Positions 19,364-60,477 of a DNA stretch of 64,000 bases are shown here, one piece after another. The position numbers and the translations under genes are program-made. The notes beneath the pieces were generated by a model. That model did not search any database, was not told the DNA's origin, and saw only the letters and a list, made by a program, of their open reading frames with translations. Each line of letters starts with the position of its first letter. The stretch's first letter is position 1. The stretch is from IMG/VR virus record IMGVR_UViG_3300035698_007246, positions 159,880-223,879 of that record. One strand, given 5' to 3'.

Positions 19364-19478
19364 ATAGAAGTAACCCCCAATTAAGTTTTAAAAATGAGAG
19401 ATGATGGAATAATCTTTGAATTGGCAAAGAAACAGTTTCGAATTCTGCTGTCTTCCATTCACCCTATATGTATTTATA
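19364..19478 (-). ncRNA. Structured cis-regulatory RNA leader, copy D (with late promoter)
   Basis: TATAAATA...ATGGAA-GACA-GCAG[aattcgaaa]CTGT-T-TCTTTG[CCAATT]CAAAGA-TTA-TTCCAT...AATTGGGGG...ATG. Confidence 0.75.
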
Positions 19479-19491
19479 CAAATTCCAATTT

Positions 19492-19725
19492 TTATTTTCC
19501 ATACTTTTCAAACCAATCAATATCTTCTTTTCGTGGTTCATATAATTTATTAGTAATCTCCAAACCCTCTTCTAAATTTGCATACACAGTCCACGCAGTA
19601 AGAAAAGTTTCCATACACATTCCAACTTCATCACATAATATTTTGGCAAAATCTTGTGCCTTTTTAGGAAGTTCAGATATTTTTATAAACATCATTTCTT
19701 GACCTCTTTCAAATGCAGTTTTCAT
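19492..19725 (-). CDS. Hypothetical protein
   Basis: Small ORF with GGGGG Shine-Dalgarno-like site. Confidence 0.55.
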   Translation of the reverse strand: MKTAFERGQEMMFIKISELPKKAQDFAKILCDEVGMCMETFLTAWTVYANLEEGLEITNKLYEPRKEDIDWFEKYGK

Positions 19726-19726
19726 A

Positions 19727-19924
19727 TCACCCCCCTTTTACATTTTCTTCACTCTCTTCTATTGTTTCTTGATAATCACTGTAAGCATTAGAAATATGTC
19801 TAACCCATCTTTCAGCATCACCATAATTTCTTTTACAATAATCAATATGCAAACATTCGCAACAATAAAGAAGTGCGTTCAATTTCTTTTTTATTTTTTC
19901 ATCACCAGTCATTTTATTCTCCAA
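19727..19924 (-). CDS. Hypothetical protein
   Basis: Small ORF in operon. Confidence 0.5.
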   Translation of the reverse strand: MENKMTGDEKIKKKLNALLYCCECLHIDYCKRNYGDAERWVRHISNAYSDYQETIEESEENVKGG

Positions 19925-20265
19925 ATATTTAGCAATTGTTTATATTTAGGTACTCTATTTTTCAGAGGATTTTTGTTATTTTTTGGATAGGATATTGAAC
20001 TTCCATCTATATATATTGATTCACCAACACCGCAGTTATGGCAAGCGTTTTCAAAATTTCTTAATTTATAAAAACACTCACTACAATTGCGATTCTGTAG
20101 TGTTATTTCACAAGTCTTACATTCTGCATGATTATATAAATTATGCACAATTGCACATTGTTTTAAGTCATATAATGTACAATTGTCACCATCTGCAAGA
20201 TGTGCATTATCTATTAATGTTTTAACTATTGCAAGTTTTAAGTTATTTTCATTTTCTGTATTCAT
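19909..20265 (-). CDS. Hypothetical Cys-rich (putative Zn-binding) protein
   Basis: Three CxxC pairs (CKTC, CSEC, CHNC). Confidence 0.55.
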   Translation of the reverse strand: MNTENENNLKLAIVKTLIDNAHLADGDNCTLYDLKQCAIVHNLYNHAECKTCEITLQNRNCSECFYKLRNFENACHNCGVGESIYIDGSSISYPKNNKNPLKNRVPKYKQLLNIWRIK

Positions 20266-20283
20266 CGTTCAAATCCCCAAAAT

Positions 20284-20592
20284 TTAATTTGTATTATCCA
20301 CAATACAATGTTTTAAAGACATCAAAAAAATGTCACCAATGTCTAACTCCTCATGTATTAATAATTTAATATATTTAAATTGACACTCACTATCCATTAT
20401 TGACACAATACCATTTTCAATTTTTGCAATACATATTATTGATTGTATAAAACATTCAAGTCCGAAATTTTTAAAATCATTTTTAATATTATTAATTTTG
20501 TTATAAATAGAAATTGCACTATCGACTGAATCTGTTTTAATAACTTGACAATTTTTATATTTTAAATCACTAATTAAATATTTATTATCCAT
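20284..20592 (-). CDS. Hypothetical protein
   Basis: ORF directly downstream of fcl. Confidence 0.5.
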   Translation of the reverse strand: MDNKYLISDLKYKNCQVIKTDSVDSAISIYNKINNIKNDFKNFGLECFIQSIICIAKIENGIVSIMDSECQFKYIKLLIHEELDIGDIFLMSLKHCIVDNTN

Positions 20593-20593
20593 T

Positions 20594-21532
20594 TTACATT
20601 TTCCTTACACGACCGGCTTTAAAGTGTTCGTATGTTTTTTTAATTCCATCACACAATTCAGTTCTATATTTCCACCCAACCGATTTCAATTTAGAAACAT
20701 CAAGTAATTTACGTGGTGTACCATCAGGTTTTGATGTATCAAACACCAATTCACCATCATACCCAACAACATCTTTAATCATGAGAGCAACATCTTTTAT
20801 CGAAATATCAATCCCAGTTCCTATATTTATAATTTCAGATTCATCATAATTATTCATCAGATAAACACATGCATCTGCAAGGTCATCAGCATATAAGAAT
20901 TCTCTTTTTGGTGAACCACTACCCCATATTTCAACACGTTTTGCCCCAGATTCCTTAGCCTCATGAAATTTTCTTATCAGTGCAGGTAGGACATGGGAAT
21001 TTTCCAAATCATAATTATCATTTTCCCCATATAAATTTGTTGGCATTACAGAAATAAAATTAGTACCAAATTGTTTGTTATATGATTGACACATTTTAAT
21101 ACCTGCAAGTTTAGACATTGCATATGCGTCATTAGTTGGTTCCAATGGTCCAGTCATAAATTGGTCTTCATTGATTGGTTGTTTTGACAGTTTAGGGTAA
21201 ATGCAAGATGAACCAAGATATAGTAATTTTTTCACACCATATTCATGAGAAGCATTAATAACATTACATCCAATTTGTAAATTCTTAAAAATGAATTCCC
21301 CAGGATGATTTCTATTATCAATTATACCACCAACACGAGCCGCTGCTAAAAATACATACTCTGGTCTATTATCATCAAAAAACCTATACGTGTCATGCTG
21401 TAAAATCAAATTCATCTTTTCACGTACACTCCAAAGTAAATTGTTATACCCTTGTCTTTTCAGTTCTCGAACTATTGCAGACCCAACAAGACCATTATGT
21501 CCAGCAATATAAATCAAACTATCTTTTTTCAT
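20594..21532 (-). CDS. fcl: GDP-L-fucose synthase
   Basis: [76 protein letters not shown]. Confidence 0.95.
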
Positions 21533-21549
21533 TTGTTCAATACCTTGTG

Positions 21550-22605
21550 TTAATTGTTATTATTAGCTTTATCATAAAGCCTAACAAGAATGTTATATAT
21601 TTCTTCTTTATCGTGTTCACTTAAACCCAATGCCTCAACATATCCCTTGATTAAATCAGGAATAGATGATATATTGATTTTTTGATTTTTTATATCAAGT
21701 TCTGACTCAAGTTCAGTTGTGTCAATATAAAATGGTGTAATTTTGATGGGATTATACTTTTCAATATCCTCGATATATTTTGTGTATTCCTCTGGGGAAT
21801 ATGTTTCATGGTCATACATTATATTTACATCAATTTTATTATTCTCAATCATTTCTTGTGAGAAATCATCTGGATAATTCAATGCAACAAATTTTGTTGA
21901 TACATTATTTGAAAAAAACTTATGTTTGTGTGAACGGAGATTATAAATTAAAAACCCACGTTCCTCATCAATATCAGCACGTGTTAGTTGATATGGTGTT
22001 CCAACATAGATAAATTTAGAATCACCTATATCACGAACGCTACGTGTGTGGAAATGACCAGAAAATATAGTTTTGAACTTATTTATGAATAAATCTGGAT
22101 TAATTCCATTTTTACTGGAAATGTATTTATTAAGACCAAACCCCGCAATATCAAAATGACCCATCAACACTTTTGCATTTTTACCATCAAGTATACCTGC
22201 AATTTCAGAATCATCAACAACCCAAGGTATCATTAATATTTTATCACCACAAACTAATTCCGGTTTTTCGATAAGATTGACATTTTCAAATTTCCTTAGA
22301 AATTTTAATGAATGCACTTCTGTTGTTGAGTTATAATATATATCATGATTACCAACCAACACATACACAGTGAAATCTTTTAATATCACATCAAATAAAT
22401 CATACACAGCATTTTGAATACGAGTATTCACACTGGTTCGAGAATCAAAAACATCACCTAACATAAATATCTTATCAATTTCATTTTTCTTTAAAAATGG
22501 AACTAACACTTCATTAAAAAATTTAAAACTACTTTCCAATAATTGTTCGGAATTATTTTCAAACCCAAAATGAGTATCTGTCAATAAACAAATATTATTA
22601 TTCAT
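21550..22605 (-). CDS. gp47: Mre11/SbcD-like recombination endonuclease (T4 gp47)
   Basis: DTHFG, GDVFD, GNHD, GHF, SGHFH, YVGTPY. Confidence 0.92.
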
Positions 22606-22607
22606 TT

Positions 22608-22967
22608 TTACATTACACCTTCATCAAAATTCTCAATAAACGATAAACTAATAAATGTATCATTAATCCTCTTTTGTTTATTGAAATATCGATTAAATGC
22701 GTTGTACGTAGTGCGTGTATAATACCCAAACGGATTTTTTGATTTATTTTCATCAAACAATGTGATGTATCGACACATATCAAGAGTCGCTTCACTCACC
22801 ATTTCATCTTTTCTGTCTTGTGTGTAATTTATAAAACTGGGTTTGTTTAATATATTTTCAGCAATGAGGATAAATATTTTCCCAAGTTTATTGTATACTT
22901 TTCTGTCTTTAGATTTTTTATATTCTATTATTAAATTTAAAAATTCCTTATTGTTAACATAGTTCAT
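22608..22967 (-). CDS. gp55: Late-transcription sigma factor (T4 gp55)
   Basis: NYVNNKEF...FINYT...DEMVSEA...FDENKSKNPFGYYT...AF. Confidence 0.85.
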   Translation of the reverse strand: MNYVNNKEFLNLIIEYKKSKDRKVYNKLGKIFILIAENILNKPSFINYTQDRKDEMVSEATLDMCRYITLFDENKSKNPFGYYTRTTYNAFNRYFNKQKRINDTFISLSFIENFDEGVM

Positions 22968-22977
22968 CCTTGCTCCG

Positions 22978-24753
22978 TTATTCTTTTAAGTGATTAATAG
23001 TCGAAAACCCATTTCCGTTTTTAGAAACTTCTAATAAAGTTTCAAATTGTGAAAAATATTCTTTTTTAAGACGATGTGAAATTATATATATTGCGAGGTG
23101 ATTTGTGTCGGTTATCATCTTTTTCATACTTTCGATAAGTTTTGCTAATCCAATTTCATCTATTGAACTGTCAAGTAATTCATCAATTGCTAATAAATTA
23201 CAATTCCAATTTGCTAATGATTTACGAATAGCAATAAAAGAGAGAAGAATGGACATATCTATCCGTTTCTTCTCCCCTTCAGAGAAACAATAATAGGAAA
23301 CATTTTCGGTTGTACTACCAAGTACTTTTATATTTTCGTTCATGAATTTGTCAAAACTAATAGTCACAGACAATTCAAATAACTTCAGATGTTCATTGAT
23401 GTTATAATTCAATATCGGAATCATCTCTTCAAAAACAAATGATTTTATACCTGTGTCTGAAAGAGCACTAACAACCAATTTACGATATCTCATATCGTCC
23501 TTCAATTGATTATTTTCCTGTACTTCACAACTATGTGTGTTTACTTTTTTTTCCAACTCATCTTTTTCATGAGAAATATCAAAATCAAATTGTCTATTCT
23601 GAATTAATTCTTTTCGATGTTCAAATTCACATATCATGTCTTGTAAATCAACTGCCTTACTACGAAGAGATGACAATTGATTCTTTTTAATCAAAATCTT
23701 ATGAACAGTTTTTTCAATTTCTTCGATATCTTCATGTATACGTTTAACCTTTTCATCCAAGACAACAACAACAACGTCATGATTCATTTTTACAGAAGTT
23801 AAACTATGAATCTGGCTATTTTTATAATCATCAGAAATCTTATGATTACAAGTCGGACATGTGTCGTGAGATGATATGAATTCAATAGTATCATTAGTGT
23901 TTCGAACACCTACTTTATGTTCTGCAATTTCTGCATTTGTTTCATCAAGTTTTTTGTGTAATTCATTTCGATTATCTTCAATTTGTATTTCTGTTTGTTT
24001 TGATAATATTTGTCCATTTTCTTTGATGTCAACTAATTTGTTTTTAATAACATTAATTTGATTATCAACATCAGCAATCTCGATACGTTTATCATATTCA
24101 AAACGATTTTCAGTATGTTCCAATTGTTTTATTCTTGCACCATCCAAATCAATAGACTGTTTGAGCATTAACAAAGATTTATCCGAAATTTCTATTTTCG
24201 GTTTCAATTCTTTAATTTCATCTTTGACAATCTTAGACATACCAGAAAATATATCAATTGAAAAAATCTGTTCAATAATCTCACGTTTTTTTGGTGTACC
24301 TAATTTTAGAAATGGTTCATTGTGATTTATTGACAATGATATAATCTGTTTGAATGTTTTATAATTAATCCCTAAAATTTTATCAATCTCATCTTGAACA
24401 AGACCTTTTGTTGATAATAATTTTATAGCAATACCATTCTTTTTGATTTCTAATAGTTTAGGTTTCAAACCACGTGTAATCGAATATGTGTTTTCGTTGA
24501 TAGTTATTATAAACGTAACTTCAAGATTCTTTTTATTTCTACGGTTAATGAGGTCATCAATTTTTATTTTACGATAAGGTTGTCCAAAAAGACAAAACGA
24601 TAGCGTATCAAGCAATGCTGATGATTTTCCTGCACCGTTATTTCCCGTGATAAGGTTCAATCCCTCGTTAAACGAGATTTTGACTTTTTTATTACCAAAT
24701 GAGAGGATGTTCCTAAACTCTCCACCCTCAAAATTTAAATTCATATATTTCAA
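22978..24753 (-). CDS. gp46: Rad50/SbcC-like ATPase (T4 gp46)
   Basis: NILSFGN, GNNGAGKS, zinc hook CPTC, FSEGEKKRID, DELLDSSID, IISH. Confidence 0.93.
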   Translation of the reverse strand: MKYMNLNFEGGEFRNILSFGNKKVKISFNEGLNLITGNNGAGKSSALLDTLSFCLFGQPYRKIKIDDLINRRNKKNLEVTFIITINENTYSITRGLKPKLLEIKKNGIAIKLLSTKGLVQDEIDKILGINYKTFKQIISLSINHNEPFLKLGTPKKREIIEQIFSIDIFSGMSKIVKDEIKELKPKIEISDKSLLMLKQSIDLDGARIKQLEHTENRFEYDKRIEIADVDNQINVIKNKLVDIKENGQILSKQTEIQIEDNRNELHKKLDETNAEIAEHKVGVRNTNDTIEFISSHDTCPTCNHKISDDYKNSQIHSLTSVKMNHDVVVVVLDEKVKRIHEDIEEIEKTVHKILIKKNQLSSLRSKAVDLQDMICEFEHRKELIQNRQFDFDISHEKDELEKKVNTHSCEVQENNQLKDDMRYRKLVVSALSDTGIKSFVFEEMIPILNYNINEHLKLFELSVTISFDKFMNENIKVLGSTTENVSYYCFSEGEKKRIDMSILLSFIAIRKSLANWNCNLLAIDELLDSSIDEIGLAKLIESMKKMITDTNHLAIYIISHRLKKEYFSQFETLLEVSKNGNGFSTINHLKE

Positions 24754-24773
24754 CTCTCCTATTCGTTAGTAAT

Positions 24774-24801
24774 AATATAATAAATTTTAAACAAAAGTCA
24801 A
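24774..24801 (-). promoter_or_regulatory. Sigma70-type early promoter upstream of gp46
   Basis: TTGACT-16 nt-TATATT in AAAACTATTGAC context. Confidence 0.55.
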
Positions 24802-24825
24802 TAGTTTTTTTATAATAATATTTAC

Positions 24826-25391
24826 AAATAATTATTAAAGTACTTGATAAAGTTTAAATATGTTCTTAAATATATTTGGACCAGGACCAATTTTAATTTA
24901 GGACCTGGTCCTTTTTTTAAAAGGTCCAAGGACCAATATAGTTAATTAATTAAATAATATATAATATATTTCACTTTATTTTTTATCAAGTACTTGAAAA
25001 AGTTTCAAACACCTAAAGTCGTTTCACTCACACGGGATTGCTAAAGCAATCCCATGTCTCGTTCCACGAAGTTGACGCTAACATAGGTTTTTGTAACAAG
25101 TATAAATAATTATTAAAGTACTTGATAAAGTTTAAATATGTTCTTAAATATATTTGGACCAGGACCAATTTTAATTTAGGACCTGGTCCTTTTTTTTAAA
25201 AGGTCCAAGGACCAATATAGTTAATTAATTAAATAATATATAATATATTTCACTTTATTTTTTATCAAGTACTTGAAAAAGTTTCAAACACCTAAAGTCG
25301 TTTCACTCACACGAGATTGCTAAAGCAATCCCATGTATCGTTCCACGAAGCTGACGCTAACATAGGTTTTTGTAACAAGTATAAATAATTA
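24826..25391. repeat. Tandem direct repeat (two 278/279-bp units) at the strand switch; candidate replication origin
   Basis: Units start at 24826 and 25104 and differ at about 4 positions; each has inverted AAGTACTTGA boxes, clustered GGACC/GGTCC, an AT-rich tract, a GATTGC-TAAA-GCAATC hairpin and a terminal TATAAATA. Confidence 0.85.
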
Positions 25392-25423
25392 CACAAAGTA
25401 TTATAAAAACATTTTGAACGGAG

Positions 25424-25840
25424 TTGTTTATGAAAAATGAACTATTTTTAGAAATTAGAAAACAAATTGATGAAGAATTAAAGATTACACCTGAAACTGT
25501 TAGAGAAAAAACTCTCAAATCACCTATGTTGTCATCAAGATATCACAATGTATTGATAAGTGAAAAACGTGTGTTAAATGGATTGGAAAGTAAAAAAAAT
25601 AAAATATTTGGAAAATTATATCAACATTACCGATATAGAAGTGAATTTGCTATATCAACAAAACTTGAAGCTGAAACTTTTATATTTTCGGATGATAAAT
25701 ATCTTGCTATAGAAGCACAATGTAAAGAACAAAAAATTATTGTAAATTATTTTGAAGAGCATATTAAAATTTTTAATAAACTTGGATTTGCATATAACAC
25801 ATATTTGGGATTTTTAAAATTAACTCAAGGTGGAGAGTAA
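25424..25840 (+). CDS. uvsY: Recombination mediator UvsY
   Basis: Helical 138 aa, SPMLSSRY...Y...FIFSDDKY; directly upstream of uvsW. Confidence 0.7.
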   Translation: MFMKNELFLEIRKQIDEELKITPETVREKTLKSPMLSSRYHNVLISEKRVLNGLESKKNKIFGKLYQHYRYRSEFAISTKLEAETFIFSDDKYLAIEAQCKEQKIIVNYFEEHIKIFNKLGFAYNTYLGFLKLTQGGE

Positions 25841-36171: not shown

Positions 36172-36274
36172 TATAAATAAATATGAGAAGGACATCGGAG
36201 TCATGACCGTTTCCTGAAACTTATACAAGTAAGGATTACTTCTCATTCATTTTAACTCGTATAAGGAGAAAATT
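36172..36274 (+). ncRNA. Structured cis-regulatory RNA leader, copy A (with late promoter)
   Basis: TATAAATA..ATGAGAAG-GACA-tCGG[agtcatga]CCG-TT-TCCT[gaaaCTTATACaagta]AGGA-TTA-CTTCTCAT...GTATAAGGAG..ATG. Confidence 0.8.
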
Positions 36275-37198
36275 ATGGGTAAAAGATTAACAAAAGAAGA
36301 ATTTGTTGAAAAAGCAAGAAAAGTTCACGGTGATTTATACGATTATAGTTTAGTTGAGTATAAAAGTGCTCATGGAAAAGTGAAAATTATATGTCAAGAA
36401 CATGGTGAATTTGAACAAAATTTTAATAATCATGTTTATAATGGTAAAGGATGTCCTAAATGTAATGGTGGGGTTCGATTAACAACAGAAGAATTCATTG
36501 AAAGAGCAATAAAAGTTCATGGTGAATTGTATGATTATAATTTGGTTGAATATGTGTCGAATAATAAAAAAGTTATAATAATTTGTAAAGTTCATGGTGA
36601 ATTTGAACAAACTCCTAATAGTCATTTAAATGGAAGTGGGTGTTCTAAATGTGCAAATATGTATAATAGAATTAATAAATCAGACACAATTGATATGTTT
36701 ATAAAAAAAGCAGAAAAAATACATGGATTGATATATGGATATTCAAAATGTGTATATGTTAATGCATATATAAAAGTCAAAATTTTATGTAAAAAATGTG
36801 ATATTTTCTTTCATCAAACTCCAAATGACCATCTAATGGGAAGTGGATGTTCTAAATGCAAATCATCAAAAGGTGAATTGAAAATTGAAAAATATTTAAA
36901 AGAAAATAATATAAAATTCATAAATCAAAAGACATTCAGGGAATGTAAGGCCGTAAAACGTTATTTGCCTTTTGATTTTTATTTGCCGGAGTATAATATT
37001 CTTGTTGAATATGATGGTATGCAACATTTTAAACCAATAAAATATTTTGGTGGTGTTGAAGCATTTCAAAAAAGACAAAAATATGACAAATTCAAAACTG
37101 ATTATTGTTTAAAGAATAATATTAAATTAATCAGAATCCCATATACGGAATTTAAAAATGTGGAAATTGTTTTACACGAGGAGTTAAAAAATGTCTAA
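36275..37198 (+). CDS. Free-standing homing endonuclease (DUF723-like Cys/His repeats plus Vsr/PD-(D/E)XK domain)
   Basis: Three repeats EFxEKAxKxHG..YDY..IICxxHGEFEQ..H..GCxKC; LPFDFYL..VEYDGMQH..LIRIPY. Confidence 0.85.
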   Translation: MGKRLTKEEFVEKARKVHGDLYDYSLVEYKSAHGKVKIICQEHGEFEQNFNNHVYNGKGCPKCNGGVRLTTEEFIERAIKVHGELYDYNLVEYVSNNKKVIIICKVHGEFEQTPNSHLNGSGCSKCANMYNRINKSDTIDMFIKKAEKIHGLIYGYSKCVYVNAYIKVKILCKKCDIFFHQTPNDHLMGSGCSKCKSSKGELKIEKYLKENNIKFINQKTFRECKAVKRYLPFDFYLPEYNILVEYDGMQHFKPIKYFGGVEAFQKRQKYDKFKTDYCLKNNIKLIRIPYTEFKNVEIVLHEELKNV

Positions 37199-46622: not shown

Positions 46623-46710
46623 TGAGAGGGACAGAGATTAATTACCTTTTCCTGAAACCTTTATGAGTAAGGATTACCTCTTAATTAAAAATCTATAAAG
46701 GAGATTGATA
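46623..46710 (+). ncRNA. Structured cis-regulatory RNA leader, copy B
   Basis: TGAGAGG-GACA-GAG[attaattac]CTT-T-TCCT[gaaaCCTTTATgagta]AGGA-TTA-CCTCTTA...ATAAAGGAG..ATG. Confidence 0.8.
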
Positions 46711-47103
46711 ATGGAAAGTAAATTTTATACATATGTGTATCTTGACATGAGAAAATCAAGAAAATATAAATATGGACAAATTGCTAATAGAAGTGGTGAG
46801 AATAATTCAAATTTTGGAAATAATTGGTCAGAAAAACAAAAAGAAAAAGCGTCTAAACTTCATAAAGGTAAGTGGATAGGTGATAAAAATCCAAGTAAAA
46901 TAAATCCTAAATGTGGTATGATAAATGGTATATCACAATATAAATATTATTTGTATGATAATGATGTTCTTATTGACGAAGGTTATAGTTTAACATTAAT
47001 GAGTAGAGAGAATAATTTGAATTATAATATGTTAAGAAAAATTTCAAAAAATGGAAATAAATATTTAAAACGATATATAATTAAAAGAGAAAAATGGAGA
47101 TAA
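46711..47103 (+). CDS. Internally deleted GIY-YIG-type endonuclease retaining NUMOD3 DNA-binding repeats
   Basis: N-terminal FYTYVYLDMRKSRKYKYG matches 60478 (FYVYVYLDPRKPGKYKYG) but jumps straight to GENNSNFG/GDKNP repeats; YVGKG, catalytic Arg and Glu absent. Confidence 0.7.
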   Translation: MESKFYTYVYLDMRKSRKYKYGQIANRSGENNSNFGNNWSEKQKEKASKLHKGKWIGDKNPSKINPKCGMINGISQYKYYLYDNDVLIDEGYSLTLMSRENNLNYNMLRKISKNGNKYLKRYIIKREKWR

Positions 47104-54403: not shown

Positions 54404-54420
54404 AATTAAGTAGGTAATTT

Positions 54421-54807
54421 ATGTTTCAAGGTAATGTAGGATTGCGAGCTGAAGGTGAGCTGGTAACATATACAAAAGAAATAATTAATGAATATATTAG
54501 ATGTAAAGAAGATATAATCTATTTTGCAGAAAAATATTTTTACATAACAACAATCGATGATGGTAAAATAAAAATACCATTGTGGGATTTTCAGAAAAAA
54601 GTTTTAAAGGCGTTTATAACACCGCCTAAAAACAGAAGGCATATAATAATGATGATGCCACGCCAGCAGGGTAAGTGTTTTTTAGATACAACTATAGTGA
54701 AATTGAGAAACAAAAAGACTAAAGAAATCAAAGAGTTACCAATAAAAGAATTTTTTGATATGATTATAGAAAATTATAAAAAGACACATAATGATAAAAA
54801 TGCCTAA
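54421..54807 (+). CDS. gp17: Large terminase N-terminal fragment (85 aa) fused to the split-intein N half (43 aa)
   Basis: EYIRCKEDIIYFAEKY..LWDFQ..PRQQGK|CFLDTTIVKLRNKKTKEIKELPIKEFFD. Confidence 0.9.
   Translation: MFQGNVGLRAEGELVTYTKEIINEYIRCKEDIIYFAEKYFYITTIDDGKIKIPLWDFQKKVLKAFITPPKNRRHIIMMMPRQQGKCFLDTTIVKLRNKKTKEIKELPIKEFFDMIIENYKKTHNDKNA
54676..54807 (+). mobile_element. Split intein N-fragment (short, atypical)
   Basis: Block A CFLDTTIV begins inside Walker A GK|T. Confidence 0.85.
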
Positions 54808-54884
54808 ATAACTAAGGATGTGTTTTGGAAAATGTATAAATACTTCTAACTATAAATATAATTTAAAAATTTGGAGTATTAAAA

Positions 54885-56084
54885 ATGATAGAAGTTTATG
54901 TTTGTGAAATGTGTAAGATGGAATTTACAGTTAAAAGAGGTTTGAAAAATCACAACAAAAGATTCCACCCTGAATTGTTTGCATACAAATGTGAAATGTG
55001 TGGAGAATTAGCTGAAGATTTAAAAGGTTTATTGATTCATGTGACTAAGAAACACAAAAATGCTGAAGAATATTTTAATAAATATTTATCAGGTAAAGAA
55101 AAATGTAGATATGAACATTGTAATGAGGCTTTAGAATACAATAATAGGTTTAGTGGGTATTATTGTTGTCAGTCACATTATGAAGCACAAAAGAAAATTA
55201 ATAATGGTATTAAATTGAATTTTATATGTCAAATTTGTGGTTCTGGGTTCGAAGATGTTGGTGGATTACAGCAACATTTAACAAAGATACATAAATTTGA
55301 TGTTATTAAAAATAAAGAATATTATGATAAATATTTAAAAATAGAAAATGAAGGATGTTGTTTATATTGTGGTAAAGAATTAAATTTAGTTAAAAATAGA
55401 TTTACTGAAGGTTATATGAAGTTCTGTTATAATACAGAATGTAATGTCCGTTGGTATAATGAAAATGATAATAGAATTGATAAAATGTCAAATTCATTAA
55501 AACAGACACATCATGATAACCCAGAAATTTCTCCATTAAAAAAAGAATATTGGATGAGTAAAGGTTATTCTGAAACACAAGCAATTGAAAAAGTTTCAGA
55601 AAGACAAACAACATTCAGTAAAGAAATTTGTATTGAAAAATATGGTGAAGATGATGGTATTAAAAAATGGCAAGATAGACAAGAAAAATGGCTTGATTCT
55701 ATGCCAAGAATGAATTTTTCTAAAATAAGTCAAGAATTATTTTGGGGGATTTATAAACATATTAAAGATAGATATAAGAATGTGTATTTTGCGAGTTTTG
55801 TTGGTGGTGATAGAGATGATAGTAAAAATAGAGAATATCGCATAAAAACAAATAGGTCATATAGATTATTAGATTTTTATATTGAGGATGTCAATAAATG
55901 TATAGAGTTTGATGGAACATATTGGCACGGTGAAATAGGTAGAGGCAACAGAACTCGTGATGAAGATAGGACAATTGAAATTTTGGAGGTTAATCCAGAT
56001 ATGAAAATATTTAGAGTAAAAGAAGATGATTACAATAAAGATAAAGAAAAAGTAGTACAAGAATGTATTGAATTTTTAAATTAA
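54885..56084 (+). CDS. Free-standing endonuclease (C2H2-like zinc fingers plus Vsr/PD-(D/E)XK-like domain) between the terminase halves
   Basis: CEMC..H..H repeats; LDFYIEDVNKCIEFDGTYWHG; TATAAATA at 54835 and 54851. Confidence 0.8.
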   Translation: MIEVYVCEMCKMEFTVKRGLKNHNKRFHPELFAYKCEMCGELAEDLKGLLIHVTKKHKNAEEYFNKYLSGKEKCRYEHCNEALEYNNRFSGYYCCQSHYEAQKKINNGIKLNFICQICGSGFEDVGGLQQHLTKIHKFDVIKNKEYYDKYLKIENEGCCLYCGKELNLVKNRFTEGYMKFCYNTECNVRWYNENDNRIDKMSNSLKQTHHDNPEISPLKKEYWMSKGYSETQAIEKVSERQTTFSKEICIEKYGEDDGIKKWQDRQEKWLDSMPRMNFSKISQELFWGIYKHIKDRYKNVYFASFVGGDRDDSKNREYRIKTNRSYRLLDFYIEDVNKCIEFDGTYWHGEIGRGNRTRDEDRTIEILEVNPDMKIFRVKEDDYNKDKEKVVQECIEFLN

Positions 56085-56096
56085 TGGGAGTTAGAT

Positions 56097-56780
56097 ATGA
56101 ATAATATTGAAGAAATCTTGAATTGCGTCGATGATGTTGGATATTTTGCTAATAATTATATTCAGCATATAAATATTGATGTTGGTTGGAAACAATTTTC
56201 ATCGTATAAATTTCAAGACATACTGTTGAATTATATGCATAGTATTCCATATAAGAAAGATGTTTTAGTTGGGTTGTTACCAAGACAAATGGGAAAAACA
56301 CTTTTAGAAATTATTTATCTTATTTATTATGTAACTTTTAATAATCATAAAAATATAATATTTTGTGGATATAAAGGTATAGTATTAGACCGGATAATTA
56401 CTAATTTTTTAAAATCATATGAAAAATTGCCAGAATTTTTAAAAAAAGATATTGTGAAAGATGACAAACATAATATTAATATTGGTAATAATAAAATATC
56501 GTTTGTTGTTGCTAATTATGTGTTTGATGACGATTGTGAAGATGAAAAAATAGATTTAGGAATTTTTGATGAATGTTTTTTAAATAATGGTATTAGTAAA
56601 TTTGAAAAGATTATTATACTATCAACAAAAAATATAAAAAAAGAAAGTTTTGGTGACAATTGTTATATGGTTAAAATAAATTGGTGGGAACACCCATATC
56701 ATGATATTGAATGGAAAAATTCATCTGTACAAAATTTAACTGAAACAGTATTTGGTAGTGAATATGATAATCGTGGATAA
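56097..56780 (+). CDS. Terminase-ATPase-like paralogue with no intein and no nuclease domain
   Basis: YFANNYI..YKFQ..PRQMGKT..YEKLPEFL..IFDE..ILST..WWEHP..EW..FGSEY. Confidence 0.75.
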   Translation: MNNIEEILNCVDDVGYFANNYIQHINIDVGWKQFSSYKFQDILLNYMHSIPYKKDVLVGLLPRQMGKTLLEIIYLIYYVTFNNHKNIIFCGYKGIVLDRIITNFLKSYEKLPEFLKKDIVKDDKHNINIGNNKISFVVANYVFDDDCEDEKIDLGIFDECFLNNGISKFEKIIILSTKNIKKESFGDNCYMVKINWWEHPYHDIEWKNSSVQNLTETVFGSEYDNRG

Positions 56781-56786
56781 ATAACT

Positions 56787-57131
56787 ATGGGAAAGATAAT
56801 AGAGTCATATGGTGTAGATGATTGGGAAGTATTGACTGATGATGGTTGGGTAGACATCCAACAAATACATAAAACAATTAAATATGATGTGTGGAAAGTA
56901 AAAACAAAAAATCATTTTTTAAAATGTGCTGATGAACATATTGTAATTGATAAAGATTATAATGAGGTTTATGTTAAAGATTTAAAACGTGGTGATAGAA
57001 TAATAACTGAATCTGGTGCAGAAAAGGTTATATCTGTTAAAAAATTAAAATGCAATTCCGAGAATATGTATGATATGTCGATTGATTCTGATACTCACAC
57101 ATATTTTACAAATGGTATATTATCACACAAC
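56787..57131 (+). mobile_element. Split intein C-fragment (long)
   Basis: Block B CADEH, block F MYD, block G SHN followed by Thr(+1). Confidence 0.88.
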
Positions 57132-58403
57132 ACAACCATTTCAACGGTATATCTCTTGCATTACATGTTGTTTAATAAAGATAAAAATGTTGCTATACTT
57201 GCTAATAAAAAAGACACTGCTTTAGAAATTATGCAACGTGTGAAAATGGCATTTGGATTGTTGCCATTGTGGTTACAACAAGGAATCAAAGAAGGTGGAT
57301 GGAACAAATCATCTATCAGATTTGAAAACGGAATGGTGATGAAGGCTTCGACAACATCATCTGATTCTATTTCCGGGGATGTTGTCTCACTTCTATATAT
57401 GGATGAGTTTGCTAAAGTAAAACCTCATATTGCTGAAGAGTTTATTACTGCGACTTACCCTGTTATTACATCGGGTAAGACATCTAAAATTATCATGGTG
57501 TCAACACCCCTTGGAATGAATCATTTTTATGAATTTTGGACTAATGCAGTAAGAGGTCCAGAACGTGATGGGAATAACTTTTATCCAATCAAAGTTAGTT
57601 GGAAAGAACATCCCAAACGTGACCAAGAATGGAAAGATGAAATACTTAGAGATATCGGACCTACCAGATTTAACCAAGAATTTGGGTGTAAATTCTTAGG
57701 TTCAAGTGATACATTGATTGATGGGGATGTTCTTGAAAATATTGCATATAAACCATCTGTTGCCACAAAATGGGGTGGATTATTTACAATATTTGAAAAA
57801 CCTGTTGAAAAAGCGTTGTATGTTCTTGGGGTTGACTCAGCTAAAGGGACTGGAAGAGATAGTTCTGTTATTCAAGTACTTAGAATTATTGATGAATTTT
57901 CTATTGAACAGGTTGCGATATACCGATATAACAATATTGATACTCATAAATTTTCTCAGGTTTGTATTGGCATAAGTAAATATTATAACAATGCGTATAT
58001 GATGATTGAAAACAATGGTGAAGGTGGAGAAGTAGCTAACATCATTTGGTATGAGTATGAAGAGGAATGTGTTTTAAATTGTGATAAAAAAGGACTTGGA
58101 ATTAGGTCAACTAAGAAAAGTAAGTTATCAGCTAATTTACATTTAAAAAGATATCTTGAAAATGGTTGGTTACGATTAAATGACAAAGAGACAGTTGTTG
58201 AGCTGTCAAAATATATAGAAGTGACACCTAATGTGTTTAGAGGTGAAACTCGTACAACACATGATGACTGTGTAACCTCTTTATTATGGGGCTTATATTT
58301 TTTATTGACACCATTTTTTGATGGTAAAGATGTGGGTGTTAAGAACATAGACAGTAAGTATGATTTAGGGGATGATGACGCTCCTTTGGTATTTTTTTCA
58401 TAA
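56787..58403 (+). CDS. gp17: Split-intein C half (115 aa) fused to the large terminase C-terminal part
   Basis: ..CADEH..MYDMSI..TNGILSHN|TTISTVYLL..ILANK..LPLWLQQG..MDEFA..VSTPLGMNHFY..GVDSAKG..HDDCV. Confidence 0.92.
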   Translation: MGKIIESYGVDDWEVLTDDGWVDIQQIHKTIKYDVWKVKTKNHFLKCADEHIVIDKDYNEVYVKDLKRGDRIITESGAEKVISVKKLKCNSENMYDMSIDSDTHTYFTNGILSHNTTISTVYLLHYMLFNKDKNVAILANKKDTALEIMQRVKMAFGLLPLWLQQGIKEGGWNKSSIRFENGMVMKASTTSSDSISGDVVSLLYMDEFAKVKPHIAEEFITATYPVITSGKTSKIIMVSTPLGMNHFYEFWTNAVRGPERDGNNFYPIKVSWKEHPKRDQEWKDEILRDIGPTRFNQEFGCKFLGSSDTLIDGDVLENIAYKPSVATKWGGLFTIFEKPVEKALYVLGVDSAKGTGRDSSVIQVLRIIDEFSIEQVAIYRYNNIDTHKFSQVCIGISKYYNNAYMMIENNGEGGEVANIIWYEYEEECVLNCDKKGLGIRSTKKSKLSANLHLKRYLENGWLRLNDKETVVELSKYIEVTPNVFRGETRTTHDDCVTSLLWGLYFLLTPFFDGKDVGVKNIDSKYDLGDDDAPLVFFS

Positions 58404-58428
58404 ATATGTTTAGGTCAATGAAAAAATG

Positions 58429-58448
58429 TATAAATAATTATATAAATA
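58429..58448 (+). promoter_or_regulatory. Tandem T4-type late promoters (TATAAATA twice) upstream of the sheath gene
   Basis: TATAAATA at 58429 and 58441; the motif also occurs at 25101, 25380, 36172, 37854, 41405, 46391, 47812, 50181, 54835, 54851, 60377 and 62487; gp55 is encoded in the window. Confidence 0.85.
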
Positions 58449-58481
58449 GAAAATAGATATTAAATTTGGGAGGTAATTAAT

Positions 58482-60374
58482 ATGCCAAGAGTATTTAACA
58501 CTCCGGGTGTGTATAGACGAGAAATAGACTTAAGTGAAATACTTATAGCTACCGGCATTTCAAATGGTGCCATCGTTGTACGTTCATCGCAAGGACAAAT
58601 AAGAAGACCTGTATTGGTTTCAAATGATAAGGAATATGTAGAACAATTCGGTCAACCTGTGTTCACATCAGGAAGCGGATTATCTGGTATTGATAAACTC
58701 ATTCCTGAATATGGATACGGTTCTTATGGAGCATTAGAATTTTTAAAAGAATCAACGAATCTTTACGTTGTGAGAGCGTTTGATAGTGGTGATGTGTATG
58801 CAGCAATGGGAGTTGGTGTTACTTTATCTGCTGATGATACTGATATTAGTGGAGGTATTGACCCATTAACGGCCACACCAGATGTTTTTGATACACGGGA
58901 TAACATCTCAAGTATTAATGAAATCGGTGATAGTATGACTGGGGCATTATTTGCGTCATTCATAAGTCCGGGTGAAGCAGGTAATGAATTTGCTTATAAT
59001 ATTGAAACATTACATCCAGACGCTGATTGGATATATCGTTATGATGAATATCCAACAGATAGTTCTGCAACAACAAATGGTCCGGGTTCAATTTGGACAT
59101 CAGGAACAAGTGCTGATATTGCAACACATTTTCCAATTGCAAGTAAAGTTTTTAAAATTAAACTTTATAAACGACCAGTTGATAAAATTTGGAATGATTT
59201 GTATTCAAATTCAGCAGACGCTGAAAATAAAAGATTAAGATTACAAGAAGTCGAATCATATTATTGCACATTGGGTCCTCAATTGGACGCTGATGGAAAA
59301 TCATTATATGTTGAAGATGTTGTAAATGGCAATTCACAATCCATTTACATGCAATCAAATATAAGTTCAATATTGGCTTATTCATATACGTTCTCAGGAA
59401 CAAGTGGTTTTTCTAATCTTCCGGGTGGTGAAGATGACGCAGGTGCTTATTTTTATAACACAACAAGATTATGTCAACTATCAGGTGGTACTGTAACCCA
59501 ATCTAATGGTTTGGGTAGTGGTGATGATGAATTCTGGGCTTATTTTAATGACAGAGAAGAAATTCCTGTTCAAATATTGGTTGGAACAAGTTATAACACA
59601 ACTACAAAACAAGCTATGGGTAACCTTGCAGTTAAGAGACTTGACTGTATTGGAACTGTACAAGCAGGAGAACTTGATGATATAACATATCAAAGAATTA
59701 TTGAATCAGAAAGATATGGGTATGTGTCTCCGTCATATATTGCTATTTATGGTGGTTATTCAAAAATTTATGATAATAATAATGACAAGTTTGTATATTT
59801 ACCGAATAGTATTTATGGTGCGTCATTGTACCCACGTATAGATAATATTTCAGACCCTTGGTATGCTCCGGCAGGTATTGACAGAGCAACACTATCTGTG
59901 TTTGACCAACGTAAGATATACAGTGCAGAACATATAGGAAAACTATATGATAAGAACATCAATATGGTGAGATTCATTAGAGGTTCAGGATTCGTAATGT
60001 GGGGTCAAAAAACTGCACAATTAAAGAAATCTGCCCTTGATAGAATACAAGTAAGAAGATCTTTATTGTTTATTGAAAATAATATTGAGATAGCATTGCT
60101 TCCATTTGTTTTTGAAAATAATACAGTACAAACTCGTTTACGTGTTTGGTCATTGATTGATGAATTTCTTGCAGGTGTATTTGCAGCAGGTGGTCTTACT
60201 AAGTATGAAGTTGTTTGTGATGAAACAAACAATCCATTATCTGTAATTGACGCAAATCAATTAAACGTGGATATATATACACAGCCGGTACGCACATCCG
60301 AATTTATACAGTTTACTACGGTCGTAACTCGTACAGGTATCAGCTTCAGTGACTTGAGACTTAAATACGCGTAA
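58482..60374 (+). CDS. gp18: Tail sheath protein (T4 gp18)
   Basis: TPGVYRREIDLS..LYVVRA..PWYAPAGIDRA..WGQKT..SALDRIQVRR..FVFENN..VVCDETNN. Confidence 0.95.
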   Translation: MPRVFNTPGVYRREIDLSEILIATGISNGAIVVRSSQGQIRRPVLVSNDKEYVEQFGQPVFTSGSGLSGIDKLIPEYGYGSYGALEFLKESTNLYVVRAFDSGDVYAAMGVGVTLSADDTDISGGIDPLTATPDVFDTRDNISSINEIGDSMTGALFASFISPGEAGNEFAYNIETLHPDADWIYRYDEYPTDSSATTNGPGSIWTSGTSADIATHFPIASKVFKIKLYKRPVDKIWNDLYSNSADAENKRLRLQEVESYYCTLGPQLDADGKSLYVEDVVNGNSQSIYMQSNISSILAYSYTFSGTSGFSNLPGGEDDAGAYFYNTTRLCQLSGGTVTQSNGLGSGDDEFWAYFNDREEIPVQILVGTSYNTTTKQAMGNLAVKRLDCIGTVQAGELDDITYQRIIESERYGYVSPSYIAIYGGYSKIYDNNNDKFVYLPNSIYGASLYPRIDNISDPWYAPAGIDRATLSVFDQRKIYSAEHIGKLYDKNINMVRFIRGSGFVMWGQKTAQLKKSALDRIQVRRSLLFIENNIEIALLPFVFENNTVQTRLRVWSLIDEFLAGVFAAGGLTKYEVVCDETNNPLSVIDANQLNVDIYTQPVRTSEFIQFTTVVTRTGISFSDLRLKYA

Positions 60375-60376
60375 TA

Positions 60377-60477
60377 TATAAATAATAAAGAGAGGGACAG
60401 TGGGTAGCTCCTATTTCCTGAAACCTTTACGAGTAAGGATTACCTCTCAATTTTAAAAATCAGTAAAGGAGATTATA
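60377..60477 (+). ncRNA. Structured cis-regulatory RNA leader, copy C (with late promoter)
   Basis: TATAAATA..GAGAGG-GACA-GTGGG[tagct]CCTAT-T-TCCT[gaaaCCTTTACgagta]AGGA-TTA-CCTCTC...GTAAAGGAG..ATG. Confidence 0.8.

What the first reader, a model, noticed from the sequence alone, without database searches (positions are those of the whole stretch)
19364..60477. Conserved three-way-junction RNA leader with anti-Shine-Dalgarno loop in front of unrelated homing endonuclease genes
Seen in sequence: four leaders (19364-19478 minus; 36172-36274, 46623-46710 and 60377-60477 plus) share the layout P1-GACA-P2 hairpin-UU-P3(UC...GA)-UUA-P1'. Three of the four follow a TATAAATA late promoter. The stems covary: P1 is ATGAGAAG/CTTCTCAT, TGAGAGG/CCTCTTA, GAGAGG/CCTCTC or ATGGAA/TTCCAT; P3 is TCCT/AGGA or TCTTTG/CAAAGA. 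In every copy the P3 loop is complementary to a segment overlapping the downstream Shine-Dalgarno, again with compensatory changes: CTTATAC/GTATAAG, CCTTTAT/ATAAAGG, CCTTTAC/GTAAAGG, CCAATT/AATTGG. The junction nucleotides (GACA, TTTC, GATTA) are invariant. The downstream genes are GIY-YIG-type (three) and DUF723/Vsr-type (one), so the RNA is not tied to one nuclease family. Established: T4 endonuclease genes such as I-TevI are silenced by simple RBS-sequestering hairpins. Inference: this is a more elaborate pseudoknot or conformational switch, possibly ligand- or protein-responsive, that jointly controls translation of toxic nucleases, or an RNA that travels with the mobile cassette. I do not recognise it as a named RNA family.
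Basis: partly seen in the sequence, partly recalled or inferred. Interest (0 to 1): 0.9.

Follow-up and report, generated by a model that had tools for sequence, protein, structure and literature searches.

The report
Pseudoknotted leader RNA of phage nuclease genes
Mobile nuclease genes in an uncultured T4-like phage each carry the same small three-armed RNA leader, one loop of which pairs with the gene's own ribosome-binding site; this is a well-supported RNA family absent from Rfam that probably keeps translation of these selfish nucleases low.

Summary
The core pattern occurs 3 times in the window against 0 expected.

Searches of viral and metagenome contigs gave more than 40 distinct relatives. 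On a 44-sequence alignment, P1, P2 and the loop-to-Shine-Dalgarno pseudoknot all covary: 90.6% of cells pair against 72.9% when shuffled (0 of 500 shuffles reach this). There are 33 different loop sequences, and nearly all match their own downstream partner.

G·U pairs and the pairing to the ribosome-binding site show that the structure forms in the sense RNA. Alleles without a nuclease gene at two insertion sites lack the element, so it belongs to the mobile cassette. It survives when the nuclease gene decays.

It precedes GIY-YIG, treble-clef/Vsr-like and HNH nuclease genes, and a few HTH genes. It has no match in Rfam 15, in GenBank phages or in 185,579 species genomes.

Best reading: a cis-acting brake on translation that sits at the 5' end of abundant late transcripts. 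A ligand or protein switch is neither shown nor excluded.

A 2009 paper on "fractured genes" described conserved 5'-UTR "hairpins" before the same two nuclease families. That is probably an earlier sighting of this element, without the junction or the pseudoknot.

The parts
19471..19478 (-). T4-type late promoter box TATAAATA of copy 1
   Evidence: Read directly. The box ends 18 nt before GACA.
19377..19458 (-). Leader copy 1, the short-P3 variant. P1 19453-19458 with 19404-19409; GACA 19449-19452; P2 19432-19448; P3 CTTTG/CAAAG 19425-19429 with 19414-19418; loop CCAATT 19419-19424 paired to AATTGG 19377-19382, which overlaps the GGGGG Shine-Dalgarno sequence.
   Evidence: fourth-best model hit in the window. 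The relative L038 carries the compensatory CCAACT/AGTTGG. Further short-P3 variants appear.
18719..19363 (-). SegE-like GIY-YIG/NUMOD3 homing endonuclease gene served by copy 1
   Evidence: Pfam NUMOD3, weak. 32% identity (BLASTP), 44% over the N-terminal part by tblastn, to L152, a protein with Pfam GIY-YIG and NUMOD3 hits.
36172..36179 (+). Late promoter box TATAAATA of copy 2
   Evidence: The box ends 11 nt before GACA, so the late transcription start should fall near the first bases of P1.
36183..36268 (+). Leader copy 2 (canonical). P1 36183-36190 with 36239-36246; GACA 36191-36194; P2 36195-36210; P3 TCCT/AGGA 36212-36215 with 36232-36235; pseudoknot 36220-36226 with 36259-36265; Shine-Dalgarno AAGGAG 36263-36268.
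   Evidence: (97 bits).
36275..37198 (+). Treble-clef (DUF4379/DUF723), Vsr-like-family endonuclease gene. Its 3' end overlaps the next ORF (start 37191) by 8 nt.
   Evidence: Pfam. More than 7,700 homologues, several named very-short-patch-repair endonuclease by JGI. ORF list.
46623..46703 (+). Leader copy 3 (canonical, no TATAAATA). It starts 5 nt after the stop codon of the gp68-like gene. P1 46623-46629 with 46677-46683; GACA 46630-46633; P2 46634-46648; P3 46650-46653 with 46670-46673; pseudoknot 46658-46664 with 46695-46701; Shine-Dalgarno 46698-46703.
   Evidence: 98 bits. Alleles without the nuclease gene (L195, L197, L198) have neither the leader nor the ORF between gp68 and the gp21 protease gene.
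46711..47103 (+). Degenerate GIY-YIG gene. It keeps the N-terminal 23 residues and the C-terminal part, but the catalytic core is deleted.
   Evidence: alignment to the 60.5 kb nuclease. No Pfam hit.
60377..60384 (+). Late promoter box TATAAATA of copy 4. It is the native promoter of the tail-tube gene, present at the same place in alleles without the nuclease gene.
   Evidence: L206 and L209 keep the box directly after the sheath stop codon.
60390..60471 (+). Leader copy 4 (canonical). P1 60390-60395 with 60443-60448; GACA 60396-60399; P2 60400-60414; P3 60416-60419 with 60436-60439; pseudoknot 60424-60430 with 60463-60469; Shine-Dalgarno 60466-60471.
   Evidence: 108 bits. Orthologous cassettes L207, L210, L203 and L204 differ in P2 and in the loop, with compensating changes.
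60478..61269 (+). GIY-YIG (LEM-3-like) homing endonuclease gene inserted between the tail sheath gene (58482-60374) and the tail tube gene (61279-61863)
   Evidence: Pfam. Comparison of the locus across relatives.

Best explanation
The element is a cis-acting 5' leader RNA that belongs to free-standing homing-endonuclease cassettes of distant T4-like phages.

Structure. It folds into a three-way junction: P1, then G-GACA, the P2 hairpin, UU(U), the P3 hairpin, (G)AUUA, and the second strand of P1. The P3 loop then forms a 6-8 bp pseudoknot with the bases just upstream of, and including, the first AGG of the gene's AAGGAG Shine-Dalgarno sequence. The start codon lies 7-9 nt beyond the pseudoknot in most copies.

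Shown here:
- the fold and the pseudoknot, by covariation;
- that it is an RNA of the sense strand;
- that it is part of the mobile insertion;
- that it sits at or next to the late transcription start.

Inferred function. The pseudoknot competes with the 30S subunit for the ribosome-binding site. This keeps translation of a potentially harmful nuclease low, even though the cassette lies on very abundant late structural-gene transcripts. The base-paired 5' end also replaces the simple 5' hairpin found in empty alleles, which may preserve mRNA stability for the essential gene downstream.

Energetics. The pseudoknot duplex averages -7.5 kcal/mol (sd 1.3). That is in the same range as Shine-Dalgarno to anti-Shine-Dalgarno pairing (-6 to -9 kcal/mol). 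This fits a tuned brake better than an absolute block.
For: - Family size: 43 distinct pattern matches from IMG/VR and JGI metagenomes, about 42 of them real (L183 is a chance match); the model alignment adds further copies, and seven more divergent short-P3 variants were seen.
- Covariation on 44 sequences, with the pseudoknot not part of the model: 90.6% of cells paired against 72.9% shuffled (0 of 500); 222 double-change cells against 74; covariation score 0.52 against 0.08-0.14 for slid partners. P1 covaries at 8 of 8 pairs, P2 at 4 of 5, the pseudoknot at 6 of 8, and P3 shows UA/UG/CG at one pair.
- The best loop-to-partner helix scores 7.2 on average for cognate pairs against 5.1 for non-cognate pairs. 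There are 33 distinct loop sequences.
- Strand-specific G·U pairs: the P2 closing G·U in 38 of 44 sequences, a pseudoknot G·U in 19, a P3 U·G in 9.
- Cassette membership: empty gp68|gp21 alleles (L195, L197, L198) and empty sheath|tube alleles (L206, L209) lack the element.
- The leader is retained beside a 9-codon remnant (L203), a 78-aa truncation (L210) and the deleted copy at 46.7 kb.
- Promoter: 17 of 42 have a perfect TATAAATA ending 7-20 nt (mode 11) before GACA. Others have a TATAAT box, including one full TTGACA-17-TATAAT.
- Energies.
- The known paradigm of RBS sequestration for T4 endonuclease genes is reviewed in PMC2988022, section 12.
Against: - There is no experimental or transcript evidence. 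Repression is inferred only from the fact that the pairing overlaps the Shine-Dalgarno sequence.
- A simple hairpin would be enough to sequester a ribosome-binding site. The near-invariant junction and loop nucleotides, and the self-complementary tips of P2 (30 of 36), are not explained by this model.
- Only about 10 of the 80 best GIY-YIG homologues carry any form of the leader. One nuclease-like gene in the same window has none. It is therefore not a general requirement of these nucleases.
- Conservation of the canonical core is inflated, because most relatives were found with exact patterns taken from that core.
Confidence: 0.6

Rival explanations
1. It is a regulated switch. The junction, or the canonical GAAA/AGUA loop, binds a small molecule, a host protein or a phage protein. 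Binding stabilises or melts the pseudoknot, so that all nuclease cassettes in the genome are timed together.
For: The pattern is typical of riboswitches: variable, covarying helices around nearly invariant unpaired nucleotides, with the pairing that controls expression overlapping the Shine-Dalgarno sequence. Junction nucleotides GACA/UU/AUUA also persist in variants that were retrieved through the protein and not through the RNA pattern. At least five copies occur in one genome.
Against: I found no conserved alternative pairing. Short-P3 variants keep only about 10 unpaired junction nucleotides, which is little for a pocket. The downstream genes share no metabolic theme. AGUA is AUUA in three members. 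No ligand or protein can be tested with these tools.
Confidence: 0.2
2. It follows I-TevI-type promoter logic. Read-through transcripts from upstream genes carry a long P1 and a tight fold (OFF). Transcripts from the late promoter start inside or at the edge of P1, which weakens the junction and frees the ribosome-binding site late in infection (ON).
For: TATAAATA ends 7-13 nt before GACA in 13 of 17 cases. With a start about 6 nt after the box (my own knowledge of T4 late promoters), late RNAs would keep only about 1-8 nt of the 5' strand of P1, while P1 can be 8-12 bp in read-through RNA, for example in L170, L191 and L009. The mechanism is established for I-TevI/II/III, segB and mobE (PMC2988022).
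Against: The strand that pairs with the Shine-Dalgarno region (the P3 loop) lies downstream of the promoter, so late RNAs still contain it. At the most common spacing the full 6-bp core of P1 is retained. 15 of 42 members have no recognisable promoter, and some have one 16-27 nt upstream.
Confidence: 0.12
3. It is mainly a 5'-terminal stabiliser or processing module. The paired 5' end protects the late polycistronic mRNA, or directs a nuclease cut, and the pairing to the ribosome-binding site is secondary.
For: P1 begins at about the predicted late start. Empty alleles carry a simple hairpin at the same place, directly after the same promoter (L206, L209). The leader is kept after the nuclease gene is lost and then directly precedes the tube gene (L203).
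Against: This does not explain the strict covariation of the P3 loop with the Shine-Dalgarno flank in 33 sequence variants.
Confidence: 0.06
4. It is a DNA-level element, such as a recombination, cruciform or homing signal that helps cassettes move or swap nuclease genes in the manner of PeSL cassettes. The RNA fold would then be incidental.
For: The tips of P2 are perfect DNA palindromes far more often than chance (30 of 36 against about 15%). Identical P2 modules recur with different P1 and loop sequences and before different nuclease families. The same DNA scaffold also occurs in inverted orientation relative to the gene. Different nuclease families sit behind the same leader at the sheath|tube site.
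Against: G·U pairs would be A·C mismatches on the other strand. Pairing with a Shine-Dalgarno sequence only makes sense in mRNA. The identical core stretches are only 11-13 nt long, which is short for homologous recombination.
Confidence: 0.05
5. It is a small self-cleaving ribozyme of an undescribed class.
For: It is a three-way junction with conserved junction nucleotides in a phage and mobile-element setting. This rests on anatomy only.
Against: No ribozyme family in Rfam matches, even at E up to 10. The RAGATH-1 hammerhead hit scores 14 bits against a threshold of 56 and lies outside the junction. The junction strands of 4, 2 and 4 nt do not fit the hammerhead core. No conserved cleavage dinucleotide is evident.
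Confidence: 0.02

Closest known systems
RBS-sequestering hairpins of T-even endonuclease genes (I-TevI, I-TevII, I-TevIII, segB, mobE of Aeh1), reviewed in PMC2988022
   Same: It is a cis RNA structure in front of a homing endonuclease gene that pairs with the Shine-Dalgarno sequence. A T4-type late promoter lies directly next to it. The presumed purpose is to limit nuclease translation.
   Different: Those are single hairpins specific to each gene, and the late promoter sits inside the hairpin so that late RNA lacks the inhibitory strand. Here there is one conserved three-way junction plus pseudoknot, shared by unrelated nuclease families. The inhibitory loop lies downstream of the promoter.
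Conserved 5'-UTR 'hairpins' of free-standing GIY-YIG and Vsr-like endonuclease genes in 'fractured gene' loci (Dassa et al. 2009, PMC2677866)
   Same: The same two nuclease families are involved. TATAAATA is often included. Two conserved sequence motifs pair with each other. The structure is kept after the endonuclease gene is lost. The 3' end of the endonuclease gene overlaps the next gene. All of these features are also seen here.
   Different: That paper described simple RNAfold hairpins, with no junction, no pseudoknot and no covariation analysis. Its loci are split-intein genes, whereas mine are intergenic sites between structural genes. I could not obtain its sequences, so identity with this motif is probable but not verified.
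PeSL mobile regulatory cassettes of T4-type phages (PMC2839356, PMC4122927)
   Same: It is a short, repeated, portable unit of promoter plus stem-loop that flanks variable genes and shows a mosaic make-up.
   Different: PeSLs combine an early promoter with a terminator stem-loop and act as recombination points in hyperplastic regions. This element is a late or 5'-terminal leader with a pseudoknot to the ribosome-binding site, and it lies in structural gene clusters. I made no sequence comparison with PeSLs.
Pseudoknot translational riboswitches (SAM-II, preQ1-II/III, fluoride classes) and the T4 gene 32 leader pseudoknot
   Same: A conserved fold in which a pseudoknot strand overlaps or adjoins the Shine-Dalgarno sequence, so that folding controls initiation. 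This comparison rests on my own knowledge.
   Different: No ligand or protein partner is known. There is no Rfam match. The genes served are selfish nucleases, not a metabolic or autoregulated gene.

Membership tests
Any Rfam 15 family | Score at or above the family's gathering threshold | tested here: not met
   0 hits over the whole window. Nothing relevant at E<=1 in five motif-bearing loci. At E<=10 on two leaders the best scores are 11-22 bits against thresholds of 39-140.
T-even endonuclease RBS-sequestering hairpin (I-TevI type) | The Shine-Dalgarno sequence is base-paired within the leader | tested here: met
   The pseudoknot covers NNNNN-AGG of the AAGGAG sequence. 6 of 8 pairs covary. 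Cognate pairing scores 7.2 against 5.1 for non-cognate.
T-even endonuclease RBS-sequestering hairpin (I-TevI type) | The late promoter lies inside the structure, so late transcripts lack the inhibitory strand | tested here: not met
   TATAAATA lies upstream of the whole element. The inhibitory P3 loop is 35-45 nt downstream of the predicted start.
T-even endonuclease RBS-sequestering hairpin (I-TevI type) | A single, gene-specific stem-loop | tested here: not met
   It is a three-way junction plus pseudoknot shared by more than 40 cassettes and at least 4 protein families.
Riboswitch | A conserved aptamer-like fold with covarying helices and invariant unpaired positions | tested here: inconclusive
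   The pattern is present in the canonical class. The short-P3 variants, however, keep only the junction nucleotides.
Riboswitch | Specific ligand binding that changes the fold | not testable with these tools
   This needs in-line probing, ITC or similar.
Riboswitch | Association with genes of one pathway related to the ligand | tested here: not met
   The downstream genes are GIY-YIG, treble-clef/Vsr-like and HNH nuclease genes and HTH genes.
Dassa et al. 2009 endonuclease 5'-UTR hairpin | Sequence identity with their two MEME motifs (their Supplementary Figure S4) | not tested
   The supplement and the figures are not held. The text gives no sequence.
Dassa et al. 2009 endonuclease 5'-UTR hairpin | Lies upstream of free-standing GIY-YIG and Vsr-like endonuclease genes, often with TATAAATA, and is retained after gene loss | tested here: met
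   compared with the paper's text.
Hammerhead or other small self-cleaving ribozymes | A conserved catalytic core (CUGANGA ... GAAA ... for hammerhead) or a match to the Rfam model | tested here: not met
   The junction strands are GACA, UU and AUUA. No model matches.
tRNA-like element | Recognised by a tRNA/tmRNA finder, with a conserved T-loop | tested here: not met
   ARAGORN finds nothing in the window. A T-loop-like UUCGAA is present in only some P2 hairpins; others carry AGCU, GGCC or GAUC.

The most novel reading that the evidence does not exclude
The three-way junction may be a dedicated scaffold that presents an anti-Shine-Dalgarno sequence and is used in two ways by selfish nuclease cassettes. 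In cis it is this leader. In trans it may be a divergently transcribed small RNA whose P2 loop is complementary to the ribosome-binding site of the neighbouring nuclease gene. Its invariant junction and the self-complementary P2 tips would then serve a specific partner or RNA-RNA dimerisation, making it a regulated sensor and not a passive brake.
Probability: 0.18. Interest if true: 0.85.

Novelty: new variant of a known kind. Interest (0 to 1): 0.65.

Why it matters
Homing endonuclease genes must be expressed enough to spread without harming the phage that carries them. Until now the control elements known in T4-type phages were individual hairpins.

Here one portable, structurally defined RNA module serves several unrelated nuclease families. 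It rides with the cassette and outlives the nuclease gene. It therefore gives:
- a marker for finding such cassettes and their remnants in metagenomes;
- a clean natural set of more than 30 compensatory loop and Shine-Dalgarno pairs for studying pseudoknot control of translation initiation;
- a compact, tunable part for damping translation.

If the junction proves to bind a factor, that would show coordinated control of selfish genes inside a virus.

Tried and rejected
- Rfam at gathering and at permissive thresholds: nothing.
- GenBank phages: megablast of the locus and blastn of the leader gave no relative.
- 185,579 species genomes: one hit, a chance match inside a coding region of a Cyclobacteriaceae MAG.
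- tRNA-like idea: rejected.
- Sarcin-ricin (AGUA/GAA) module in P3: I considered this from memory. It is weakened by AUUA variants and by its absence from short-P3 members.
- Leader peptide: the short ORFs that start in P1 are not conserved; copy 4 has no ATG.
- Intrinsic terminator: the U-run after P1 is short and inconsistent, and termination there would silence the essential downstream gene.
- Coupling to the stop codon of the upstream gene: the distance from that stop codon to P1 differs widely among the four copies, about 5 to 34 nt.
- One viral scan was wasted on a mistyped IUPAC pattern.
- Link to the 2009 GOS loci: I tried through protein homologues. The three NCBI-derived homologues I looked up come from other assemblies. 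One returned no DNA; the other two (three places) have no leader.
- The csRNA catalogue of Fremin et al. 2023 (PMC10690425) may list this motif without a name. Its tables are not held, so I could not check.

Full report
**What is in the window**

Three of them (36.2, 46.6 and 60.4 kb, plus strand) share a nearly identical core. The order is P1, G-GACA, the P2 hairpin, UUUCCUGAAAC, a 6-8 nt variable loop segment, AGUAAGGAUUA, and the second strand of P1. The fourth (19.4 kb, minus strand) keeps P1, GACA, P2, UU, AUUA and P1', but has a plain 5-bp P3 with a 6-nt loop. TATAAATA precedes three of the four.

The pattern GACA-N(8-30)-TTTCCTGAAAC occurs 3 times in the window against 0.00 expected. 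Folding each copy alone is not significant (z from -0.7 to +0.2), so the case rests on comparison with relatives.

The window comes from a distant T4-like phage. Its gp23 is about 34% identical to that of cyanomyoviruses. It also encodes a T4-type portal, a prohead protease, a sheath and a terminase. The window is part of a 223,879-bp IMG/VR contig that carries at least one more canonical copy outside the window.

**Relatives and covariation**

Exact-pattern scans returned 35 viral loci and 46 metagenome loci. A further scan anchored on the 5' half added members with changes in the 3' core. After removing duplicates there are 43 distinct pattern matches, of which one (L183) is a chance match.

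I built a covariance model from 19 sequences outside the window. It finds the three canonical window copies at 97-108 bits, and the 19.4 kb copy as the fourth-best hit in the window.

I scored a 44-sequence model-based alignment against the full structure. The pseudoknot was not part of the model. Results:
- 90.6% of cells form standard pairs, against 72.9% after shuffling (0 of 500 shuffles reach this).
- 222 cells change on both sides, against 74 in shuffles.
- The covariation score is 0.52, against 0.08-0.14 when partners are slid by 1-3 columns.
- All 8 P1 pairs, 4 of 5 P2 pairs and 6 of 8 pseudoknot pairs show double changes.
- P3 is almost invariant but shows U-A, U·G and C-G at one pair.

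An independent parse found 33 different loop sequences. The best helix between a loop and its own downstream region scores 7.2 on average, against 5.1 for non-cognate combinations. The 3' strand of the pseudoknot is always NNNN(N)AGG, followed directly by AG of an AAGGAG Shine-Dalgarno sequence. The start codon lies 7-9 nt beyond the 3' strand in most copies (range 4-14).

Frequent G·U pairs would be A·C mismatches on the other strand: the P2 closing pair in 38 of 44 sequences, a pseudoknot pair in 19, a P3 pair in 9. The structure therefore forms in the sense-strand RNA.

**Breadth of the family**

The short-P3 form of the 19.4 kb copy is not a one-off.
- L038 has the same P3 with a compensated loop change (CCAACT/AGTTGG in place of CCAATT/AATTGG). 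Its P2 is identical to that of the 46.6 kb copy.
- L077 has UGUG/CACG with CCGAUA/UAUCGG.
- I retrieved loci through the GIY-YIG protein and not through the RNA. Among these, L251, L253, L255 and L268 have further P3 and loop variants. All keep GACA, UU and AUUA or CUUA, and all keep a loop complementary to the Shine-Dalgarno flank.

The junction and the pseudoknot are therefore the common denominator. The GAAAC and AGUA segments define only a subclass.

Conservation of the canonical core is overstated, because most sequences were found with patterns drawn from it. Variants such as AUUA for AGUA, GGAUAA for GGAUUA and UCCC/GGGA for UCCU/AGGA do exist.

**Genes served**

Downstream ORFs fall into these groups:
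- about 19 GIY-YIG proteins, SegE-like or LEM-3-like, often with NUMOD3;
- about 15 treble-clef DUF4379/DUF723 proteins, with DUF7487 and a Vsr-like C-terminal part;
- one HNH protein and one NUMOD3 plus DUF559 protein;
- three RepA_N/HTH_36 proteins and a few unknowns.

The association is not obligatory. Of the 80 best GIY-YIG homologues in IMG/VR, only about 10 carry any version of the leader. Two homologues of the treble-clef gene from other assemblies whose DNA could be read have none (a third look-up returned no DNA). The fifth nuclease-like gene in the window (54885-56084) has only two TATAAATA boxes.

**The leader is part of the mobile cassette**

Between the gp68-like gene and the gp21 protease gene, relatives L195, L197 and L198 have a 10-20 nt spacer with no leader and no ORF. 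The window has leader plus ORF, starting 5 nt after the stop codon.

Between the sheath and tube genes, empty alleles L206 and L209 keep TATAAATA directly after the sheath stop codon. A simple hairpin and the tube gene's Shine-Dalgarno sequence follow. Filled alleles (the window, L207, L204, L210) have the leader directly after that same native promoter.

Orthologous cassettes at this site differ in P2 and in the loop, with compensating changes. L203 retains an intact leader next to a 9-codon remnant. L210 retains it before a 78-aa truncation. The 46.7 kb ORF of the window has lost the GIY-YIG catalytic core. Several nuclease families occupy the sheath|tube site behind the same leader.

**Promoters**

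17 of 42 members have a perfect TATAAATA ending 7-20 nt (mode 11) before GACA. Seven have a TATAAT box, including one complete TTGACA-17-TATAAT. Fifteen have no recognisable promoter.

T4 late transcription starts about 6 nt after the box (my own knowledge). On that basis the RNA would begin at about the first base of the 6-bp core of P1. The whole fold, including the inhibitory loop, is therefore present in late RNA. This differs from the I-TevI paradigm, in which the late promoter lies inside the hairpin (PMC2988022).

**Mechanism**

The most economical reading is a cis-acting brake on initiation. The junction holds the P3 loop so that it captures the first half of the Shine-Dalgarno sequence. 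The pseudoknot duplex averages -7.5 kcal/mol (sd 1.3), close to the -6 to -9 kcal/mol of Shine-Dalgarno to anti-Shine-Dalgarno pairing. An A/U-rich linker, 9-15 nt in most copies, lies between P1 and the 3' strand of the pseudoknot.

The cassettes sit directly behind strong late promoters and in front of abundant structural genes. Such a brake would separate nuclease dosage from mRNA abundance. The paired 5' end would also replace the hairpin that the empty allele has at that position.

The structure, the strand and the cassette membership are shown here. Repression is inferred.

**What this does not explain**

Three things remain unexplained:
- why a conserved junction is needed at all;
- why the junction nucleotides are so constant;
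- why 30 of 36 distinct P2 hairpins have a self-complementary tetramer at their tip (AGCT, GGCC, TGCA, GATC, TCGA, CATG or AATT, often extended to 6-8 nt). The composition-matched null is about 15%, and the empirical rate in the window is 14.8%.

Different copies in one genome carry different palindromes. Identical P2 modules recur in otherwise different leaders and before different nuclease families. Kissing-loop or extended-duplex dimerisation, a DNA-level palindrome, or templated repair between the two arms of the hairpin are all possible. None has been tested.

**Rivals**

I rank the rivals below the best explanation in this order: a ligand- or protein-responsive switch; I-TevI-like promoter logic acting through P1 length; a primary role as 5' stabiliser; a DNA-level recombination signal; a ribozyme. 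The evidence and the refuting experiments are given in the structured fields.

**Comparison with the known, and novelty**

No Rfam 15 family matches. No GenBank phage carries the motif, and no species-representative genome does.

In function it belongs with the RBS-sequestering structures of T-even endonuclease genes, but it fails two of the three features that define those hairpins.

The closest prior report is Dassa et al. 2009 (PMC2677866). In 15 of 16 free-standing GIY-YIG and Vsr-like endonuclease genes of ocean-metagenome 'fractured gene' loci, they saw RNAfold hairpins in the 5' UTR. The hairpins carried two conserved motifs that pair with each other. Ten included TATAAATA, and the hairpin was retained after the endonuclease gene was lost. 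This matches what I see so closely that it is probably the same element or a sister element. I could not obtain their sequences to test this.

They did not describe the three-way junction, the pseudoknot or the covariation. I therefore rate this as a new variant of a known kind: well supported, and ready for submission to Rfam and for bench tests.

Noticed in passing
L325/L030:8066-8140, L327, L328, L025:5232-5322, L331 (related loci): The same DNA scaffold (TATAAATA, P1, GACA, P2, UU, P3, UUA, P1') occurs in inverted orientation relative to a Zn-finger/DUF7487 nuclease-like gene. No ORF or Shine-Dalgarno sequence follows it on its own strand. The P2 loop on that strand is complementary over 8-9 nt to the Shine-Dalgarno sequence and spacer of the divergent gene, and it covaries with them (GAGTCCAA, GAGTCAAA, GAGTGTAT, GGAGTGT). 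It may be a trans-acting antisense version of the leader. Alternatively it may be a copy of the Shine-Dalgarno region inside a cis leader.
   Followed up: partly
all canonical leaders; window 19432-19448, 36195-36210, 46634-46648, 60400-60414: The tip of the P2 hairpin is self-complementary in 30 of 36 distinct P2 sequences, against about 15% expected. Identical P2 modules are shared by leaders with different P1 and loop sequences and different downstream nuclease families. This is unexplained.
   Followed up: partly
window 56097-56780 and 56787-58403: The large terminase gene is split into two adjacent ORFs. The first holds the N-terminal part of Terminase_6N. The second begins with a HINT (intein-like) domain, followed by Terminase_6N and Terminase_6C. 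This looks like a split-intein 'fractured gene' of the kind Dassa et al. described, here without an endonuclease gene between the halves.
   Followed up: partly
window 54885-56084: A 399-aa protein with C2H2 zinc fingers is related to the treble-clef/Vsr-like nucleases. It lies just upstream of the split terminase and is preceded by two TATAAATA boxes, with no structured leader.
   Followed up: partly
window 24873-24955 and 25151-25234: Two identical copies of a terminator-like hairpin with a U-run, about 278 bp apart, lie in the region where transcription direction switches.
   Followed up: no
L196:1447-1614: A relative carries a small HNH ORF at the same gp68|gp21 site, without this leader. 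The site is therefore used by different mobile nucleases.
   Followed up: no
L291:457-600: An aberrant leader lies upstream of a GIY-YIG homologue. Its P2 segment GUUGACGC has a perfect 8-nt complement (GCGUCAAC) downstream, near the ribosome-binding site. This suggests that P2, and not P3, makes the long-range contact there.
   Followed up: no
window 20594-21532: An NAD-dependent epimerase/dehydratase gene lies among the tail genes of the phage.
   Followed up: no
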